NCBI RefSeq assembly: GCF_001194135.2 | Contig: NC_068988.1 | Coordinates: 53,614,398-53,678,263, forward strand | Source: Octopus bimaculoides | Lineage: Eukaryota | Direction: 5' to 3' | DNA: 63,866 bases | Part shown: positions 12,652-59,924 of the stretch, piece by piece | Layout of the letters: each line of letters begins with the position of its first letter | Position numbering within the stretch: position 1 is the stretch's first letter | Notes under the pieces: generated by a model | Seen by the model: only the letters and a program-made list of their open reading frames with translations | The model's database searches: none | What the model was told of the DNA's origin: nothing | Position numbers and translations under genes: made by a program

Positions 12652-13638
12652 TTACAGATTGGTTAATAAAATAATGACAAAAAGATTGAAGATATTTGCA
12701 ATATATCTGTAGCTGTTAACATTCCCGATTGAATTGGCCCCTGGATCACTAGGATTCCAAGAGAAGGACATTAGTTTGTGTTCAACAAGCATACCTAATT
12801 CTGGATTTGTTGTTACGCAATCGGAATAAATTTTTACCAATTTCACAATATCTTCTGTTTTCTCGTTGAAAATTACTTTATCACAATATGTTTCATTTCC
12901 ATTCATCTTCCTGTCAATTTTTTTTAGTTTCTGGCAGAAGATGCCACTACTGCTCGCAAACTCTTTAGCTTTTGAAATATAGATTGTCTTATTTTCTGTT
13001 AGATCATATGATGTGAATTTCTTCAAAAGCGCGTCAATACATTTAATCGTGTGTGTATAGTTGTACTTAGAACAAAATTTGTTGTAGAATTTTAAGGGAT
13101 TTCTTTCATGATCCACTTTAGGATAGCACTTCAGTTCCTGACCATAATTTGGTATCAAATGAAACAGAGGGTCTATTATTTTACATTTGATATTTAAAAT
13201 GGAATCCAAATAACGAAACCAAATCATACGCACTCTTAATGGACAGCGATTGAGTTTTAGAAACATGCCTCTTTCCATTTTTTTTTTACAGAATGCTCTA
13301 GAGTGACTATTATCATCAGGAATAGAGTTCATATCACAATCGCGCGAATCAAATTTGATTTTTTTATATCTTTTACAAAATACTCTTGTTTTCTTAATAA
13401 TTTTGGTAAAATTTATACTTTGTTTGTATTGCAGATCAATTTTGTGATTCGAAGAGCTTATATTTTGCAGTAAACATTGCATATACTTTGGGTAAGATGG
13501 CGAACATACAGAGCCGACTAACTCATCACTATCAAAGCTTAAATGTCGGGTACAATTTACTTGAACATTGCCGTGACTTAATGGAATATTGCAACTAAAA
13601 AGAACGAAGATTGACAGAATAAATACGTAAAAATCCAT
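12652..13638 (-). CDS. Intronless 328-aa secreted, Cys-rich, probably GPI-anchored protein (orphan)
   Basis: 987-nt ORF from ATG 13638 (the track start at 13659 is not an ATG). Hydrophobic signal peptide MDFYVFILSIFVLFSCNIPLSHG, 14 mature Cys in two similar modules, 6 N-glycosylation sequons, C-terminal hydrophobic tail IANIFNLFVIILLTNL with no cytosolic segment. Confidence 0.85.
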   Translation of the reverse strand: MDFYVFILSIFVLFSCNIPLSHGNVQVNCTRHLSFDSDELVGSVCSPSYPKYMQCLLQNISSSNHKIDLQYKQSINFTKIIKKTRVFCKRYKKIKFDSRDCDMNSIPDDNSHSRAFCKKKMERGMFLKLNRCPLRVRMIWFRYLDSILNIKCKIIDPLFHLIPNYGQELKCYPKVDHERNPLKFYNKFCSKYNYTHTIKCIDALLKKFTSYDLTENKTIYISKAKEFASSSGIFCQKLKKIDRKMNGNETYCDKVIFNEKTEDIVKLVKIYSDCVTTNPELGMLVEHKLMSFSWNPSDPGANSIGNVNSYRYIANIFNLFVIILLTNL

Positions 13639-13777
13639 AACGGCTTCTAATATTTGCAAGCGGTAACTTTCACAAGAATTATGATCATGTGGTAACTACG
13701 GACGTAAAAGAAATGAATAACCGAAAAGTTCAGATTACTAATATTTCAAGCGGGAGGGAAAGCTGTCTGGTTGGAGC

Positions 13778-13784
13778 ATTTATA
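13778..13784 (-). promoter_or_regulatory. Putative TATA box of the orphan gene
   Basis: TATAAAT on the minus strand, about 140 nt upstream of ATG 13638, in GC-richer flanks. Confidence 0.4.
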
Positions 13785-14159
13785 AGTGGCTTCACCGGAA
13801 AAAAACAGCGATAATACTTCACCAAACACTAAACCAGACCGATCCTTAACACGTCATCTTTGATAAATAAGATTCTATTGTAACTGAAAAGAAAATACTG
13901 TTCGTCATAGAGTTGACAAATTTCCGCATGTAATCCTCGGATTTGTTTTCCATTTTTAAAATAATAAATATTAAAAAAATCTAATTCTATACAATTTGGA
14001 TGAAAACTCGGTTAATTGTGCTACTTACTTGGTTAATTAGCTAACGTTAATATGTCGTAGCTTAGGTTAGTTACCAAATGTCAACTAATTCAATTGTGAA
14101 TAATCATGCCCTTGTTAACATCACACTAAAATACAGGTTAATTCTAAATATGTTGTTAT

Positions 14160-17291: not shown

Positions 17292-18451
17292 CTAGAGAAA
17301 AAAAAAAAAGAAAGAAAGAAAATTTTTTTTAAATAATACAAATAATGATTCTTTCTAATTTTGGCAGAAGGCCAACAAATTTGAGGGGAAGCAGAAAGTC
17401 AATTACATTAACCCCAGTGTACAACTGGTACTTATTTTGTCAATGCTATGGGGAAGAAAGGCAATGTTCACATCTACAGGATTTGAACTCAAAACATAAA
17501 ATACCAGAAGAAAGCATTTCATCTGACATGCTAATGATTCTGCCAGCTTGCTACCTTAATAATTATAATAATAATAATCCTTTCTACTAAAGGCACAAGG
17601 CCTGAAATTTTGGTGGAGAGGAGACTAGTTGATTACATTGATGCCAGTGATTTACTTAATTTATTGACCCCGGAAGGATGAAAAGCAAAGCTGACCTCGG
17701 CGGAATTTGCACTCAAAACATAAGGGCAGATGAGATGCCGCTAAGCATATTGCCCAGTGTGCTAATGNNNNNNNNNNNNNNNNNNNNNNNNNNNNNNNNN
17801 NNNNNNNNNNNNNNNNNNNNNNNNNNNNNNNNNNNNNNNNNNNNNNNNNNNNNNNNNNNNNNNNNNNNNNNNNNNNNNNNNNNNNNNNNNNNNNNNNNNN
17901 NNNNNNNNNNNNNNNNNNNNNNNNNNNNNNNNNNNNNNNNNNNNNNNNNNNNNNNNNNNNNNNNNNNNNNNNNNNNNNNNNNNNNNNNNNNNNNNNNNNN
18001 NNNNNNNNNNNNNNNNNNNNNNNNNNNNNNNNNNNNNNNNNNNNNNNNNNNNNNNNNNNNNNNNNNNNNNNNNNNNNNNNNNNNNNNNNNNNNNNNNNNN
18101 NNNNNNNNNNNNNNNNNNNNNNNNNNNNNNNNNNNNNNNNNNNNNNNNNNNNNNNNNNNNNNNNNNNNNNNNNNNNNNNNNNNNNNNNNNNNNNNNNNNN
18201 NNNNNNNNNNNNNNNNNNNNNNNNNNNNNNNNNNNNNNNNNNNNNNNNNNNNNNNNNNNNNNNNNNNNNNNNNNNNNNNNNNNNNNNNNNNNNNNNNNNN
18301 NNNNNNNNNNNNNNNNNNNNNNNNNNNNNNNNNNNNNNNNNNNNNNNNNNNNNNNNNNNNNNNNNNNNNNNNNNNNNNNNNNNNNNNNNNNNNNNNNNNN
18401 NNNNNNNNNNNNNNNNNNNNNNNNNNNNNNNNNNNNNNNNNNNNNNNNNNN

Positions 18452-41629: not shown

Positions 41630-44600
41630 CTGAGGTGAACTAAGGAAATTCAATGTCATACATATGATGGATATAAATGATATATGAGCATAAGCAACAA
41701 GACATATCTGAGTATATTGTGTGAGTGGATATGTGTGTGTGTGTGCGCGCGCGCGCATGCATGTGTTTTGTTTACTTGTTTCAGTCACTGGACTGTAGCC
41801 GTACTGGGGCACTGCCTTGAAGGATTTTGATTGAATGAAACAACTCCAGTACGTACGTACGTACGTACGTACGTACGTACGTACGCATGCATGTATGTGT
41901 GTGTGTGTGTATGCATGCACACACACACACACATACATACATATTTAGAAAAAGAGAACTTAAGATAACGGAATATGTGCTTTCCATTGACGAAAATCAA
42001 CAGTGAACAGATATTCACGATCGAGTCCGCCAGAATGAATTAAGAATGAATAGTTACGTTAATATTTAGATTCAAGAAGGCGGTGCGCTGGCAGAAACAT
42101 TAGCACGCTGGGCGAAATGCTTATTTCGTCTGCCGCTACCTTCTGAGTTCAAACCTCGACCGCCGAGGTCGACTTTGCCTTTCATCCTTTAGCAGTCGAT
42201 TAAATAAGTACTAGTTACGCACTGGGGTTGATGTAATCGACTTAATCTCTTTGTCTGGCCTTTTTTGTCCCCTCTATGGGTATTAAAGAAATAAATATTT
42301 AGATTCAGGAAGGTGGCGAGGTGGCAGAAACGTTAGCACGCCGGGCGAAATTCTTAGCGGTATTTCGTCTGTCTTTACGTTCTGAGTTCAAATTCCGCCG
42401 ACATCGACTTCGTCTTTCATGTTTTCAGGGTTGATAAATTAAGTACCAGTTGCGTACTGGTCTATCTAATCGACTGCCCTCCTCCCAAATTTCGGGCCTT
42501 GTGCCTAGAATAGAAAAGAATGTTTAGATTCAGGCTATTCTCCTTGAATCCATGAAGCAAGGGAAATAACTTCTAACAAGTTAATCCTCTTCTAATAGAA
42601 GTTATTCCCCTTGATAAAGTCTTTGTTTTCTATATGAGTACTATTACGTAAATGATCAGAGCAGATCTTTATCATATGACCTTACCTTATTTTTTTTCTT
42701 CCCCCAATGAGATGACAGTAAGTACACGAGGACTTTTAACCTTTAAGAGTACAGTCTTCACGCATCGGTGGAAACCATTCACCAAATGCATTGAGTTTTG
42801 TTAAACAAAAGTTCAACGTATTTACTAAACTAAGAACCGCAAGCTTTACTTATAAGCTTCCATCAAATGGTATTTCTTAGGTAAAATACGAGTTATTGGA
42901 CAACCTGTTCATGGATCATTAGGAGAAATCTCTTGATGGCTTTTTACTATGTTTGTAGAAACACTCTGGTTTGCCTCAATTTCCTCTAGCTGAAGCGCCA
43001 GCTCACCTTCTAAAATTCAACTTCAGGGCGGAGTCTGACCAAAATCGGGCGTGATTGCGTGCGTGTATGCGTGCGTGTGTGTGTATGTATGTATGTATGT
43101 CATTATTCATTCCCTTTCGAAATTATCCCTAATTGTGGTATAGAGTTTTTGGCTGCTCTTTCTAGCTGGTTAGATGTCCTATTATAGGCATCTCTGTATT
43201 TTAAATGAATAAAATACATAGTCTATTTACTAATTCTTTCCTTTCGCTAGACCACTGGTAGTAGATAAAATTTCTTAAATTTTTTTTGCTATCCTATGAT
43301 TTATTAATAATGATAAAATATATATATGTGTGTGAGTGTGTGTGTGTGCGCACGTCATTACTTTGCCTTTCTCTCTCCTTTTGTTCTTTTTTCCAGCACG
43401 CCCAATTGCAAATCCTTCCTCCTCCACCTTACCTCTCCTGTCAAACCTTTTTATCCCAACCAGTCGCCATGCTTGATCGCTAAATCCACAAGTTTTTGGG
43501 GTTTTTTTAAATTCTCTCTCTGTATATTTTCTCTTATTCCTTTCTGTTGAAGAGCATAGGCTCGAAACGTAAAAGAATTCCTCACTTTCCCTAGCATCAA
43601 ACTAATACACTTGTTTGTTGATGTGTGCCTGCATATGTTTGGGTGTATATCTGTGTGTGTGTACGTGTGTTAGTGTGTGTGCGTGCGTGCGTGCGTATAC
43701 GTACCATATACACAATACACACTCGATTGTGTACACACATCATACACAGTTTATTCGGGATAAAATGTTTGGAATGTTTTACAAAGGTTTACTGGACATA
43801 CCTGCACGAGTGTGTCCCCACATCGTCTCGATTTTGTTTCCTCATCACTTTCCAAAACATGGATAGTTTTTAATGAAATTTTCTACAGATACCCTTCACA
43901 TGGCGTAGATTCGGACTATGTCGGAATTTGTTGTGATTTTTTTTTCGGAAGTTGGGAGAGAAGTTTTGGATAATTCACACGAATCGATTTTCAAAAACTA
44001 TGAGAGGCGTGCGTGCGTACGTGCGTGCGTGTGTCTGCTTGATATATGTACACGCGATTATGTACATATAGTATACAGATTTTACTCTGGGGAAATTCAA
44101 ACGAAGGATTTGGGGAATGTTTATAGGCGTAGGAGTGGCTGTGTGGTAAGTAGATTGCTTACGAACCACATGGTTCCAGGTCCAGTCCCACTGCGTGGCA
44201 CCTTGGGCAAGTGTCTTCTACTATAGCCTCGGGCCGTCCAAAGCCTTGTGAGTGGATTTGGTAGACGGAAACTGAAAGAAGCTCGTCGTATATATATATA
44301 TATATATNNNNNNNNNNNNNNNNNNNNNNNNNNNNNNNNNNNNNNNNNNNNNNNNNNNNNNNNNNNNNNNNNNNNNNNNNNNNNNNNNNNNNNNNNNNNN
44401 NNNNNNNNNNNNNNNNNNNNNNNNNNNNNNNNNNNNNNNNNNNNNNNNNNNNNNNNNNNNNNNNNNNNNNNNNNNNNNNNNNNNNNNNNNNNNNNNNNNN
44501 NNNNNNNNNNNNNNNNNNNNNNNNNNNNNNNNNNNNNNNNNNNNNNNNNNNNTGTATATATTCGTGTGTCTCCAATGCTGGTGTGTTTATGTTTCTGTAA

Positions 44601-46774: not shown

Positions 46775-48164
46775 TTATAATTGCTATAATTTTACTGTTG
46801 TACCGGTCTCACTTCACAGATGTGGTTTACAGAGGAAACAAGTGATTTCTCATGGTTTTCATGATCAGATTCATTCAAAACCTATCAAAAAAACCAATAT
46901 GAATTGAATAAACAAGTTTTATATCGAAGTAAAGATTTTAGAAACATAAAACCAAACTGAATAATATTTACAAAATCTCATTTTTGAAATTGAAATATAA
47001 TCAAAAAAATAAAAAAAGATAACGGTTCAGATCACTCTGCTTTCTTTGTAATCTTTCCTGTCGTGAAAATGTCACAAAATTAAACTGCAGTCAAAGGGCA
47101 GCATTCCTGGTCAAGAAGCAATTCAGAATACAAAAGCAGATTTTGGCATTGAAAAGATTCTCAACACTAAAACTATTTATGAACTTTGTGGGTTGGGAAA
47201 ATGTATTGTGTGGCTGTGTGGTAAGAAGTTTGCTTCCCAACTACATGGTTCTGAGTTCAGTCCCACTGTGTGGCACTTTGAAGGCGTGTCTTTCTACTAC
47301 AGCCTCGGGCTGACCAAAGCCTTATGAGTGGACATGGTTGCTGAAAACTGATAAAAGCCTGTCATATGTATGTAAGCATGTATGTACATATGTGTGTGTA
47401 TGTTAGTGTGTGTGTGCATATCTGTTTCTGTCTTTGTCCTCCACCACCTCTTGACAACCAATGTTGGTGTGTTTACATCAATAGAGACCAATAGAATAAA
47501 TACCAGGCTTTAAAAAATAGAAGTTGAAAATGCACTGAGAATAGTTAAAATAATTTTTATTAATATATTTAGAGCTTTAACCAGTTTCACAATTTACACT
47601 GATTTTCAAAAAGTTCAAATAGAAAGATGTGGCTTATGTTACATCTGCCTTGCTTCTGACTAGTGTTTGAAGCTTGCTCTATTTTTATAGGGAATTCATA
47701 GCTCAAATTAATATATGCTTTCAATAGGATTTGATCGGTAGAGGATAGTCACATGAACGGTCTTAGAAATTTTTGTGGGTTCCCTGCTACATCCGTGTGT
47801 TAGTATCAAATGACAATGTTTGGCCTTGTAAATTAAGGCTGACACGGTTGGCTGAACATGTCCAAACAATCAATGCTCTGAATGCTTTCTGCCAAGTGTT
47901 TGAAGAGAACGAATACATGATTAAGTTTGCAACCTTTTGTATATTTCCTGTATTAGTGTCATGTGACAGAATATTTTGTGCCTAAAAAGAAGGTTGACAC
48001 AGTTGAGTGAACATGTTTACTTATTATCAAGGCACTCCAACTTTAATCTGTCTGGAAGGAGAGTGGCTAAAGTTTAAGTTGTTAGCTGTGTAGCTTCCTC
48101 ATGGTAAGTGGCAGAATGAATTTTGCGTGTGAATAGTTATTTGTGTATGTACCGTTAAAGTTTG

Positions 48165-48900
48165 TTAAGTCTTGGTTTGTATGAAAGTATTTCATTGTTC
48201 ATTTGCACTTCATCTGTGATATTCACTGAACATAGTTAGAGTAGAGTGGGAAGACCTGGAATATGTGTCCACTCAGTGGAATCTGTCTAGTATTGGGGTC
48301 TCGTAATTGTTGCTGGTGAATAGTCAGTCTGTTTCTTGGAGTAAGCTTTGTTTGACCTATGTAATCTTCATTACATCCTTGACATTTGATAGCGTATATT
48401 AAATTTCTTGAAGAACATGTAAAGTGATTTTTAACAGTAAAAGTCTGTCTTGATTTGAATTTGTATGCTGTGTCTTCAATAAGGTTAATGCAAGTCCTGC
48501 AGCTGGGGTGGCCACACTTTCTCATTGTTGGTGTAGGAATTGTGGAAGGTAATTTAGCACTTGGGAGGAATTTTTTGAAGGACTTTGATTGTCTTTTATT
48601 TTTGATTATTTTGTGTATTTCGAATGCTTGTTTCATTCTTGGGTCTTGTTGTAGTGGGATGTTCTGGTGGATAATATTGTAAACCTCTGTGTTTCTTGGG
48701 TCGTGTGTTGTAATAAAGGGTAGAGTATTGGATGTATTTGAAACTCTTTTCAATTCTGTCTGGAATTTCATGGGGGAATTTCTCAAGCCAGAAATTTATT
48801 GCCTCTAGGCCATATTGGTGTTGGATTGTGGTATAGAGGTTTACCACATCAAAAGATACATTAGTAATATCATTGTTTATGAATTTTTGTATATTAGCAA
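48165..48900 (-). mobile_element. Penelope-like element: RT fragment fused by deletion to the GIY-YIG endonuclease
   Basis: SFDVVNLYTTIQHQYGLEAINFWL (RT motif), then LPFITTHDP...KCGHPSCRTC...FTCSSRNLIYAIKCQGCNEDYIGQT..RNRLTIH (GIY-YIG). Confidence 0.9.
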
Positions 48901-51743: not shown

Positions 51744-51863
51744 GCTTACGGCTATATCATGTTGAAAGCATTGGTTCTCATACGATCACTGAAGTTAAGC
51801 AACATCGAGCCTAGTTAGTACTTAGATGGGTGACTGCTTGGGAAACCTAGGTGCTGTAAGCAT
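51744..51863 (+). pseudogene. Full-length dispersed 5S rRNA copy, probably a pseudogene
   Basis: GCTTACGGCTATATCATGTTGAAAGC...GAAGTTAAGCAAC...TTAGTACTTAGATGGGTGAC...GGTGCTGTAAGC; terminal stem GCTTAC/GTAAGC intact. Several CpG-to-TpG/CpA changes relative to metazoan 5S, and no run of 4 or more T as terminator. Confidence 0.9.
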
Positions 51864-51875
51864 TCCATTTCTTCT

Positions 51876-52290
51876 ACGTGCAAGAGTGGCTGTGTGGTAA
51901 GTAGCTTGCTTACCAACCACGTGGTTCTGGGTTCAGTCCCACTGCGTGGCACCTTGAGCAAGTGTCTTCTACTATAGCCTTGGGCTGACCAAAGCCTTGT
52001 GAGTGGATTTGGTAGACAGAAACTGAAAGAAGCCCGTCGTATATATGTATATATGTATATGCATATATATGTATGTATGTGTATATGTTTGTGCATCTGT
52101 GTTTGTCCCTCCATCATCGCTTGACAACTGATGCTGGTGTGTTTACATTCCTGTAACTTAGTGGTTTGGCAAAAGAGACTGATAGAATAAGTACTAGACT
52201 TACAGAGAACAAGTCCTGGGGTCCATTTGCTTGACTAAAGGCAGTGCTCCAGCATGGCCGCAGTCAAATGACCGAAACAAGTAAAAGAGT
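51876..52290 (+). mobile_element. SINE family A, full-length copy abutting the 5S copy
   Basis: Complete head-core-tail structure. Confidence 0.9.
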
Positions 52291-59260: not shown

Positions 59261-59924
59261 GTGTGTCACCATTTCTTACATTGCTGCCACCTCAACTATT
59301 TTGTTCAGTCCGGCAAAAGCTAAAGAACATGCCCAGAAAATCCTTCAACTTCTTATAGATTTCAGTTATGAAGATAACCCTATTTTTTTCCACATCTTCA
59401 GTAACGGAGGTTCCATCATTTATCAACATGTTTGTTCACTCTTAGGCAATGCTGCAGAGTTTAAACACCTTAAAGTTTGTGGATCTGTTTTTGACAGTGC
59501 TCCAGGGAAACCTCGGCCAATCAATGCTATAAAATCCATTCTGATTGTTTTCCAACATTGGAATATTATCTTTCGGTTGTTTGCTGCTCTCTTTTTGTTC
59601 ATCTATCTACATTTCACTGTCATTAAACACAAGATTTATACTTATTTTATGGGACCAGACCATGGTGATGTCTATTCATTCCTGAAAAATGACTCCAAAC
59701 ATTTGATGCCTCAGCTCTATCTATATTCCTCTGTTGATAAAATAATACCATCTGACGACATTGAACAATTGATAAAGTTTCGTGAAGAGAGTCTTGGGGT
59801 TAAAATCTTTAAACATAAATGGACAGATTCTTCACATGTCAAACACTTTGTCTCTCATAGGGAAACCTATATTAACACTTGTTACAGCTTCTTGGATACA
59901 TGTCTGAAAAAACTTATTCAATAG
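59261..59924 (+). CDS. TMEM53: TMEM53 exon 2 (DUF829 alpha/beta-hydrolase-like)
   Basis: ttgcag| acceptor in phase 2; FHIFSNGG, IFDSAPG-like, PQLYLYSSVD and SSHVKH motifs with a central hydrophobic segment; TAG at 59922-59924. Total 855 nt = 284 aa. Confidence 0.96.

What the first reader, a model, noticed from the sequence alone, without database searches (positions are those of the whole stretch)
12652..13638. Orphan intronless gene for a Cys-rich, probably GPI-anchored surface protein
Seen: a 987-nt uninterrupted ORF in about 30% GC DNA with a signal peptide (cleavage near SHG|NV), 14 mature Cys, six N-X-S/T sequons (NCT, NIS, NFT, NYT, NKT, NET) and high Lys content. It ends in a small-residue segment (GANSIGNVNS) plus a terminal hydrophobic tail, and has a TATA-like motif upstream. 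Established: this architecture defines GPI-anchored ectoproteins. I recognise no family. Inference: a cephalopod-lineage receptor or ligand; GPI-anchored Cys-rich proteins elsewhere act in gamete recognition, immunity or neurotrophic co-reception. This is the best candidate for undescribed biology here.
Basis: partly seen in the sequence, partly recalled or inferred. Interest (0 to 1): 0.78.

Follow-up and report, generated by a model that had tools for sequence, protein, structure and literature searches.

The report
Octopod Cys-rich, probably GPI-anchored surface protein gene
This is a real single-exon octopus gene for a secreted, disulfide-rich, probably lipid-anchored surface protein; it is not an orphan but belongs to a small, undescribed protein family found so far only in cephalopods, and its function is unknown.

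Summary
The ORF is real. It lies on the minus strand at 12652-13638 and encodes 328 aa. The open stretch is 347 codons, against at most 208 in composition-matched simulations.

It is not an orphan. A related species has a colinear orthologue with the same start and stop, 79% aa identity and all 15 Cys kept. A full HMMER scan found seven more clusters of 327-367 aa at 18-32% identity. One is an Argonauta hians hypothetical protein and one is a polyadenylated mRNA. Twelve Cys and a D-x4-L-x-P-x-YG-x4-CY motif are invariant or nearly so. Most members have an N-terminal signal peptide and a GPI-type C-terminus.

Pfam, a PDB sequence profile and Foldseek found no known relative. The Foldseek query was an all-alpha AF2 model (pLDDT 73, pTM 0.69).

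The window copy evolves fast and close to neutrally (dN/dS about 0.5-0.7). ORF, Cys and reading-frame retention still reject neutrality (p about 0.001-0.009). Its sister clade is clearly constrained (dN/dS 0.13-0.19).

Best reading: a GPI-anchored, basic, glycosylated binding protein of an undescribed cephalopod family. The GPI anchor, expression and ligand are untested.

The parts
12652..13638 (-). Complete single-exon CDS, 328 aa plus TAA stop
   Evidence: The orthologous contig L001 has the same start and stop with one in-frame 3-nt indel.
13570..13638 (-). Predicted signal peptide, residues 1-23 (MDFYVFILSIFVLFSCNIPLSHG | NV)
   Evidence: The best 10-aa Kyte-Doolittle score is 3.26 at residues 5-14, and small residues sit at -3/-1 (S, G). 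All family members have an N-terminal hydrophobic segment. No SignalP run was possible.
12736..13569 (-). Mature ectodomain, residues 24 to about 301: 14 Cys, 6 sequons, pI 9.3, net charge about +19, predicted all-alpha
   Evidence: It retains the 12 family-invariant Cys.
13141..13263 (-). Most conserved core, residues 126-166 (FLKLNRCPLRVRMIWFRYLDSILNIKCKIIDPLFHLIPNYG). Its C-terminal end carries the first five residues (D156, L161, P163, Y165, G166) of the family-wide motif D156-x4-L161-x-P163-x-Y165-G166-x4-C171-Y172; C171 and Y172 lie just downstream, outside these coordinates
   Evidence: 41 consecutive residues are identical to the orthologue, with only 2 synonymous nt differences (permutation p=0.003). 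P163, G166, C171 and Y172 are invariant and D156, L161 and Y165 are conserved in at least 90% of the 12 family sequences.
13264..13350 (-). Variable segment, residues 97-125. About half the positions differ from the orthologue. Other subfamilies carry an extra Cys pair here
   Evidence: Alignments. AF2 pLDDT is below 50 at residues 107-120.
12652..12735 (-). Predicted GPI-attachment signal, residues 302-328 plus stop. Candidate omega sites are A301/S303, followed by the spacer IGNVNSYR and the hydrophobic tail YIANIFNLFVIILLTNL
   Evidence: A similar small-residue cluster plus terminal hydrophobic tail is present in 7 of the 9 other clusters examined (orthologue included) and absent from P0003 and P0006. 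This is a heuristic only.
13639..13800 (-). Conserved proximal upstream region, the putative 5'UTR or core promoter. It includes TATAAA at 13779-13784
   Evidence: It is 87.6% identical to the orthologue with 1 gap column. The distal flank is 83.1% identical with 7 gap events. The TATAAA itself is not conserved. No transcript evidence exists.

Best explanation
Window 12652-13638 (minus strand) is a functional single-exon gene of an octopod.

Its product enters the secretory pathway through a cleaved N-terminal signal peptide. It folds into an all-alpha ectodomain of about 275 residues, held by up to seven disulfides and carrying up to six N-glycans. It is most likely transferred to a GPI anchor near A301/S303 with loss of the C-terminal hydrophobic propeptide. 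That would leave a strongly basic glycoprotein (pI about 9.3) on the outer face of the plasma membrane.

It belongs to an undescribed family seen so far only in cephalopods. The family has at least four old paralogue lineages. Most are GPI-tailed and some are tail-less, hence soluble. The window gene is in a subfamily that lost two Cys pairs.

Inferred function: a cell-surface binding or co-receptor module. The invariant D-x4-L-x-P-x-YG-x4-CY loop and the conserved core are the candidate structural or binding centre. The fast-evolving remainder is the candidate specificity surface.

Shown here: the ORF, conservation, family membership, predicted all-alpha fold, and absence of known relatives. 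Inferred only: GPI anchoring, disulfides, glycosylation, surface binding role, and expression of this copy.
For: ORF significance: 347 open codons against at most 208 in simulations.

Orthologue:
- Contig L001 is colinear with window 14131-12598, with the same ATG and stop and 79% aa identity.
- Neutral simulations with the observed substitution spectrum give P(no stop)=0.006-0.009 and P(all 15 Cys kept)=0.003-0.006.
- Amino-acid changes are 68 against 80.7±4.2 expected (p=0.002).
- The CDS has 1 in-frame indel in 990 columns. The 5' flank has 8 indel events in 496 columns (p=0.0009).
- There is a 41-aa identical core (p=0.003).

Family:
- HMMER against 1.84 billion representatives found P0002-P0008, with E from 8e-33 to 6e-4.
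- P0004 is Argonauta hians GAB1600335.1, a single contiguous ORF in a 63-Mb contig.
- The P0014 contigs look like polyadenylated mRNA, ending in an A-run after ATTAAA, and the protein was recorded in 110 blocks of the collection.
- Twelve Cys are invariant, plus the motif.
- The sister clade P0002/P0027/P0028 shows third-position-biased divergence (95/69/141). Its dN/dS is 0.13-0.19, with off-frame controls near 1.

Topology: only N- and C-terminal hydrophobic segments exist, and the tail ends the protein. Omega-like small-residue clusters occur in most members.

Fold: AF2 with the 12-sequence alignment gave pLDDT 72.8 and pTM 0.69, all helices.

Charge: tailed members have pI 8.7-9.5 and tail-less ones 6.4-7.9.
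Against: There is no transcript evidence for this copy. The three orthologue contigs share identical ends and include 500 nt of upstream flank, so they may come from genomic reads.

Divergence from the orthologue is almost even across codon positions (37/37/41). NG86 dN/dS of 0.54 is no better than the off-frame controls (0.48-0.75). A spectrum-corrected estimate is about 0.7. Constraint on this copy is therefore weak on average.

No canonical AATAAA lies within 1 kb downstream, and the TATA motif is not conserved.

The GPI and signal-peptide calls are heuristic. Two family members lack the tail.

The function is inferred from architecture alone. No ligand, tissue or phenotype is known for any member.
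Confidence: 0.6

Rival explanations
1. The copy in this window is a decaying or functionless paralogue. The family is real, but this Octopus-lineage copy is drifting close to neutrally and is not expressed or not needed.
For: Codon-position differences are 37/37/41. dN/dS of 0.54 is indistinguishable from the off-frame controls of 0.48-0.75. The CDS is only slightly more conserved than the flank, at 88.3% against 84.6% (Fisher p=0.054). No transcript evidence exists, and no polyadenylation signal lies nearby. The sister clade is far more constrained, with dN/dS 0.13-0.19.
Against: Both species keep a full ORF with the same start and stop (P=0.006-0.009 under neutrality). Both keep all 15 Cys (P=0.003-0.006). 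The CDS has a single in-frame indel against 8 indel events in half as much flank (p=0.0009). There is a 41-aa identical core. All 12 family-invariant Cys and the motif are intact.
Confidence: 0.12
2. The protein is secreted or membrane-bound without a GPI anchor. Either the C-terminal hydrophobic stretch works as a transmembrane anchor, or it is simply retained or cleaved, making the protein a soluble carrier or ligand such as a lipid-binding all-alpha Cys-rich protein.
For: No GPI predictor was run. Two paralogue clusters (P0003, P0006) end without a hydrophobic tail and would be soluble. All-alpha disulfide-rich folds are common among small-ligand carriers; that point is general knowledge and was not tested here.
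Against: The tail is only 17 residues and ends the protein, with no cytoplasmic residues or stop-transfer charges. It is preceded by a G-A-N-S cluster at the canonical distance of about 8-10 residues. The same layout recurs in divergent paralogues whose tail sequences are otherwise unrelated.
Confidence: 0.15
3. It is an unrecognisably diverged member of a known all-alpha Cys-rich GPI-anchored family. The best candidate is the GFRalpha/GAS1 (GDNF-receptor) superfamily: two tandem Cys-rich helical domains, GPI anchor, and a single-exon gene as in vertebrate GAS1.
For: Size, the GPI-type tail, the all-alpha prediction and 14-18 Cys all fit. There is a weak hint of an internal duplication, residues 46-98 against 191-245 (hhalign P=5e-4, probability 31%). 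The resemblance to GAS1 is recalled from memory and was not tested by alignment.
Against: No Pfam hit, including PF02351 GDNF, at E<=1 for any of the 12 members. There was no PDB sequence-profile hit. No Foldseek hit to any GFRalpha, GFRAL or other chain was found; all E>1 and TM about 0.1. The Cys spacing lacks the CxC motif typical of GFRalpha domains; that comparison is with a pattern recalled from memory.
Confidence: 0.07
4. The ORF derives from a transposable element or a virus (an env-like or accessory ORF) rather than being a host gene.
For: It is intronless and lies in a repeat-rich region with Penelope-like and other retroelement fragments.
Against: It is single-copy in the window. 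The flanks are orthologous and colinear between species. There are only a few old paralogues per species, each with unique flanks. There is no BFVD structural match, and no Pfam domain at all, including RT, integrase and env domains.
Confidence: 0.03

Closest known systems
Argonauta hians hypothetical protein Ahia01_000311300 (GAB1600335.1; P0004) and the unnamed Logan-contig proteins P0002-P0008, P0027, P0028
   Same: These are homologous over nearly the full length (E from 8e-33 to 6e-4; 18-32% identity). They share the 12 invariant Cys and the LIPxYGxxLxCY motif. All have a signal peptide and most have a GPI-type tail. Where genomic DNA is available (L004, L024) the ORF is a single exon.
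   Different: The window protein and its nearest clade (P0002/27/28) lack four Cys (two presumed disulfides) present in the other lineages. None of these proteins has a name, a domain assignment or a known function.
GFRalpha / GAS1 family (Pfam PF02351 GDNF domain): GPI-anchored, all-alpha, Cys-rich co-receptors
   Same: The architecture agrees: signal peptide, helical disulfide-rich ectodomain of similar size, GPI-type C-terminus, and soluble as well as anchored relatives. There is possibly a tandem duplicated module.
   Different: There is no sequence or structural similarity by Pfam, PDB profile or Foldseek. The Cys spacing is different. This is a working analogy, not membership.
Folate receptor / JUNO, IZUMO, Ly6/uPAR and DUF19/CPG4
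   Same: They are Cys-rich, secreted or GPI-anchored ectoproteins. Some evolve fast and act in recognition.
   Different: No Pfam hit was found for any of them. The best Foldseek PDB E-value is 1.4, and none of these proteins is among the 33 listed matches. The predicted fold is all-alpha, unlike the beta-rich three-finger Ly6 fold.

Membership tests
GPI-anchored ectoprotein (architectural class) | Cleavable N-terminal signal peptide | tested here: met
   Hydrophobic h-region at residues 5-14 (Kyte-Doolittle 3.26) followed by S-H-G | N. Heuristic only; SignalP was not available.
GPI-anchored ectoprotein (architectural class) | C-terminal signal: small omega/omega+2 residues, a polar spacer of about 6-10 aa, and a hydrophobic tail ending the protein with no cytoplasmic residues | tested here: met
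   A301-N-S or S303-I-G, then the spacer IGNVNSYR, then the 17-aa tail ...LLTNL-stop. The layout is conserved in the orthologue and recurs in most paralogues. Heuristic only; NetGPI was not available.
GPI-anchored ectoprotein (architectural class) | No internal transmembrane segment | tested here: met
   The best internal 19-aa Kyte-Doolittle mean is 1.0.
GPI-anchored ectoprotein (architectural class) | Biochemical proof: PI-PLC release and lipid-anchor labelling | not testable with these tools
   Requires experiment.
Undescribed cephalopod Cys-rich all-alpha family (P0002-P0008, P0027, P0028) | Significant full-length sequence homology | tested here: met
   hmmsearch E from 8e-33 to 6e-4 against a 1.84-billion-protein library. 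tblastn of members against the window gave E from 1e-11 to 3e-35, only at 12655-13641.
Undescribed cephalopod Cys-rich all-alpha family (P0002-P0008, P0027, P0028) | Twelve invariant Cys plus the D-x4-L-x-P-x-YG-x4-CY motif | tested here: met
   C45, C55, C88, C117, C132, C152, C171, C189, C200, C235, C252 and C274 are all present, as are D156, L161, P163, Y165, G166, C171 and Y172.
GFRalpha/GAS1 (PF02351) | Match to the GDNF-domain HMM | tested here: not met
   No hit at E<=10 for the window protein and none at E<=1 for the 12 family members.
GFRalpha/GAS1 (PF02351) | Structural similarity to solved GFRalpha-type domains | tested here: not met
   Foldseek against PDB gave no match below E=1 and no GFRalpha or GFRAL chain among the 33 listed. 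The model has moderate confidence (pLDDT 73).
Folate receptor/JUNO, IZUMO, Ly6/uPAR, DUF19/CPG4, glypican | Pfam HMM match or fold match | tested here: not met
   Pfam negative, PDB profile negative, Foldseek against PDB negative.
Any family represented only in AlphaFold DB or ESM Atlas | Fold match to predicted structures of cellular proteins | not testable with these tools

The most novel reading that the evidence does not exclude
The gene represents a cephalopod-restricted protein family with a new disulfide-stapled all-alpha fold, possibly a tandem duplication of a C-x9/10-C-x32/35-C helical module. The family diversified into GPI-anchored basic members and soluble near-neutral members. 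The Octopus copy would be under diversifying selection outside a frozen 41-residue core. On this reading it is a lineage-specific cell-surface recognition system, for example in gamete, chemotactile or immune recognition, with no counterpart in other animals.
Probability: 0.3. Interest if true: 0.6.

Novelty: new variant of a known kind. Interest (0 to 1): 0.42.

Why it matters
Cephalopod genomes hold many taxonomically restricted genes whose roles in their unusual biology are unknown. This locus defines one such family concretely. The family is single-exon and therefore easily missed by annotation pipelines. It is secreted or GPI-anchored and disulfide-rich. It has no Pfam domain and no structural neighbour in the PDB. 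It also combines a strongly constrained clade with a fast-evolving Octopus copy.

If the fold is new and the proteins sit on the cell surface, they are candidates for lineage-specific recognition functions and a tractable target for expression mapping and binding screens. If an AFDB or HHsearch comparison links them to a known family, the finding becomes a routine annotation.

Tried and rejected
1. AF2 with only the window protein and its orthologue failed (pLDDT 32), so that model was not used.
2. The search for homologous proteins is limited by its word index. It found only the orthologue, and with the family alignment only P0001 and P0008. The family was found only by the exhaustive HMMER scan.
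3. An exact-sequence look-up of the window protein found no contig. No expression or species information was obtained for this copy.
4. NG86 dN/dS for the window-orthologue pair was rejected as evidence on its own, because off-frame controls gave similar values. It was replaced by substitution-spectrum simulations.
5. No paralogue exists elsewhere in the window or within 10 kb either side of the Argonauta gene. Only P0027's own gene matched among the family sequences compared with its locus, namely the window (with its gene) and the Argonauta locus (tblastx).
6. No conserved synteny was detectable between the window and the L004 or L024 flanks. Only shared repeats were found.
7. Literature searches by run accession, by record or locus identifiers and by descriptive terms found no description of the family. 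One search did trace the Argonauta assembly to PMC12682272.
Whether the gene is nested in that gene's intron is unresolved.
9. TE or viral origin was rejected: single copy, orthologous flanks and no BFVD match.

Full report
OBSERVATION

The ORF exists as described but lies on the minus strand. The ATG is at 13638 and the TAA stop at 12654-12652. That gives 987 nt, 328 codons and 31.5% GC. With its upstream in-frame extension it is a 347-codon open stretch, the longest in the window. The next longest is 239 codons. One hundred first-order Markov simulations of the window gave a mean longest open stretch of 144 codons and a maximum of 208.

The protein has 15 Cys, 14 of them after the predicted signal-peptide cleavage at SHG|NV. 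It has six N-X-S/T sequons and 11% Lys. It has exactly two hydrophobic segments, at residues 1-21 and 311-328. The C-terminus reads G300-A-N-S, then an 8-residue polar spacer, then a 17-residue hydrophobic tail that ends the protein. This is the textbook layout of a GPI-attachment signal. I could only assess it heuristically, because no SignalP or NetGPI was available.

The upstream TATAAA (13784-13779, 146 nt before the ATG) is real. It is weak evidence, because the hexamer is frequent in this AT-rich DNA and is not conserved in the orthologue.

IS IT A GENE?

A word-indexed search of 5.8 billion proteins returned one relative, P0001. It is carried on three nearly identical 1.55-kb Logan contigs from runs SRR11869384, SRR11869385 and SRR11869391.

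The contig is colinear with window 14131-12598 at 85.6% identity. The match includes about 470 nt of upstream flank and the downstream (CA)n repeat. The gene caller had started P0001 at an internal Met. The contig in fact carries a complete 329-codon ORF with the same ATG and stop as the window gene, differing by one in-frame 3-nt indel inside the signal peptide.

Amino-acid identity is 79%. All 15 Cys are conserved, and so are five of the six sequon positions.

The classical dN/dS signal is weak. Differences are spread 37/37/41 over codon positions. NG86 gives 0.54, while off-frame controls give 0.48 and 0.75. I therefore simulated neutral divergence, placing the observed 115 substitutions with their observed spectrum at random:
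- The chance of no stop codon is 0.006-0.009.
- The chance of keeping all Cys is 0.003-0.006.
- The expected number of amino-acid changes is 80.7±4.2, against 68 observed (p=0.002).

Indels tell the same story. There is one in-frame event in 990 CDS columns, against eight events in 496 flank columns (p=0.0009). A run of 41 identical residues (126-166), carrying only two synonymous differences, is longer than permutation allows (p=0.003).

So the ORF has been maintained as coding sequence, but on average under relaxed or mixed selection. My spectrum-corrected dN/dS estimate is about 0.7.

NOT AN ORPHAN

An exhaustive HMMER scan of 1.84 billion cluster representatives found seven further clusters, P0002-P0008 (E from 8e-33 to 6e-4). 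They are 327-367 aa long and 21-29% identical to the window protein.
- P0004 is Argonauta hians GAB1600335.1, annotated 'hypothetical protein'. It is encoded by one contiguous 1104-nt range in a 63-Mb contig. That assembly was traced to PMC12682272.
- The others are known only from Logan or ENA assemblies.
- P0014, in the P0005 cluster, was recorded in 110 blocks of the collection. Its 1.3-kb contigs have 46-89-nt leaders, and most of them (and the longer 2.0-2.5-kb contigs) end in an A-run just after an ATTAAA. They are colinear with the longer 2.4-kb contigs. These look like unspliced, polyadenylated mRNA.
- P0007 likewise appears as roughly 1.5-kb contigs with short leaders, from several projects.
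- P0002 and P0006 come from the same runs, so one species carries at least two paralogues.
- P0008 comes from SRR11869391, the same run as the window gene's orthologue.
- A further search from P0002 added P0027 (63% identical to P0002, a single ORF in a 276-kb ENA contig) and P0028 (55%).

In the family alignment, 12 Cys are invariant, as are P163, G166, C171 and Y172. D156, L161 and Y165 are conserved in at least 90% of sequences. Together these form the motif D-x4-L-x-P-x-YG-x4-CY.

A neighbour-joining tree and the Cys pattern place the window gene and its orthologue with P0002/P0027/P0028. These sequences share the absence of four Cys that the other lineages have, presumably two disulfides. 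Within that sister clade, divergence is concentrated at third codon positions (95/69/141). dN/dS is 0.13-0.19, with off-frame controls near 1.0. That is unambiguous purifying selection on the family.

Most clusters have a small-residue cluster followed by a terminal hydrophobic tail. P0003 and P0006 end without one, and the P0006 stop codon was verified in the DNA. Tailed members are basic (pI 8.7-9.5) and the tail-less ones are near neutral (pI 6.4-7.9). The sample is small.

WHAT KIND OF PROTEIN

Pfam gives nothing for the window protein at E<=10 or for the 12 family members at E<=1. A family profile against all PDB sequences gives only a spurious hit at E=0.09.

AF2 with the 12-sequence alignment gives a moderately confident all-alpha model, with mean pLDDT 72.8 and pTM 0.69. 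pLDDT reaches about 90-97 in the blocks covering residues 161-170 and 191-240. It is low in the signal peptide, in the variable loop at 107-120 and in the C-terminal tail.

Foldseek finds no neighbour below E=1 in the PDB (350,542 chains) or in BFVD. These are GFRalpha, folate receptor/JUNO, IZUMO and DUF19/CPG4.

A profile-profile comparison of residues 46-98 with residues 191-245 gives a weak hit (P=5e-4, probability 31%). It aligns C55...FC88 with C200...FC235, and C45 and C189 precede at a similar distance. This hints at an internal duplication.

CONTEXT

The window is a draft eukaryotic scaffold with N gaps, microsatellites and retroelement debris.

A SINE-like repeat is present in at least 12 copies. 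It is 80-87% identical to copies in the Argonauta locus, which argues the source is an incirrate octopod.

The gene is single-copy in the window. The nearest recognisable host exons are a DUF5578 exon on the same strand at 37465-37833 and a DUF829/TMEM53-like exon at 59301-59924. Whether the gene is nested in an intron was not resolved.

MECHANISM (inferred)

The protein enters the ER via the signal peptide. It forms up to seven disulfides and is N-glycosylated. It is then most likely transferred to a GPI anchor near residues 301-303, which would display a basic all-alpha ectodomain on the cell surface.

The family has anchored and soluble paralogues, an invariant loop and core, and a rapidly changing remainder in the Octopus copy. 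That combination is the pattern seen in binding or co-receptor families, such as GFRalpha/GAS1 or Ly6/uPAR. This is an analogy and not a claim of homology.

I put about 0.9 on 'real coding gene and family member'. I put about 0.65 on GPI anchoring and about 0.3 on a surface-binding or co-receptor role.

RIVALS
- A decaying copy. The near-neutral codon pattern supports it. ORF, Cys and indel retention argue against it.
- A non-GPI secreted or TM-anchored protein.
- An unrecognisably diverged GFRalpha/GAS1-type protein.
- TE or viral origin.

VERDICT

It is wrong on 'orphan'.

This is a new, uncharacterised family of a familiar architectural kind. It is moderately interesting. An AFDB or HHsearch comparison and expression mapping are the decisive missing steps.

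Noticed in passing
window 51744-51862 (+): A full-length 5S rRNA match (Rfam RF00001, 101.9 bits, model positions 1-120). It is a single copy in the window and lies about 20 nt upstream of a SINE-like repeat copy. The 5S sequence itself is not part of the repeat.
   Followed up: partly
window 3637-3799, 27471-27703, 44133-44307, 47210-47478, 51882-52150 and at least 7 further copies; L004 18608-18704 and 2633-2727: An interspersed SINE-like repeat of about 100-270 nt, often next to (TA)n/(CA)n runs and assembly gaps. Copies in the Argonauta hians locus are 80-87% identical, so the element is shared among incirrate octopods.
   Followed up: partly
window 37465-37833 (-): An ORF matching Pfam DUF5578 (E=6e-26, profile positions 148-226 of 268). 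It is probably an internal exon of a host gene on the same strand as the finding. The finding could lie downstream of that gene or inside one of its introns.
   Followed up: no
window 59301-59924 (+): An ORF matching Pfam DUF829 (TMEM53-like; E=3e-33, profile positions 46-242 of 242). It is probably the large terminal exon of a host gene.
   Followed up: no
window 48223-48786 (-) and 29425-29976 (-): Retroelement debris. The first is a GIY-YIG-domain ORF, probably Penelope-like. The second is an ORF interrupted by an N gap, and it is similar to a stretch in the unrelated cephalopod contig L024 at 17729-17969.
   Followed up: no
window 31913-32629 (-): A 238-codon ORF made of a degenerate tandem repeat (LTYFPFKLYFCDLD...). 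This is a minisatellite and not a gene. The marginal Pfam LRRNT hit is spurious.
   Followed up: no
family members P0003 and P0006 versus the rest: The two clusters that lack the C-terminal hydrophobic tail have near-neutral ectodomains (pI 6.4 and 7.9). All tailed members are basic (pI 8.7-9.5). This suggests charge is linked to membrane display, but n is small.
   Followed up: partly
L041 544-1527 (run SRR11869391): Paralogue P0008 (327 aa, a different subfamily) comes from the same sequencing run as the window gene's orthologue. The related species therefore has at least two family members, and the source genome probably does too, outside this window.
   Followed up: partly
window 13676-13715 (-): A block of about 40 nt, 40-80 nt upstream of the ATG (TTCATTTCTTTTACGTC[C/T]GTAGTTACCACATGATCATA), is almost identical between the two species. 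It could be a core promoter or 5'UTR element.
   Followed up: no
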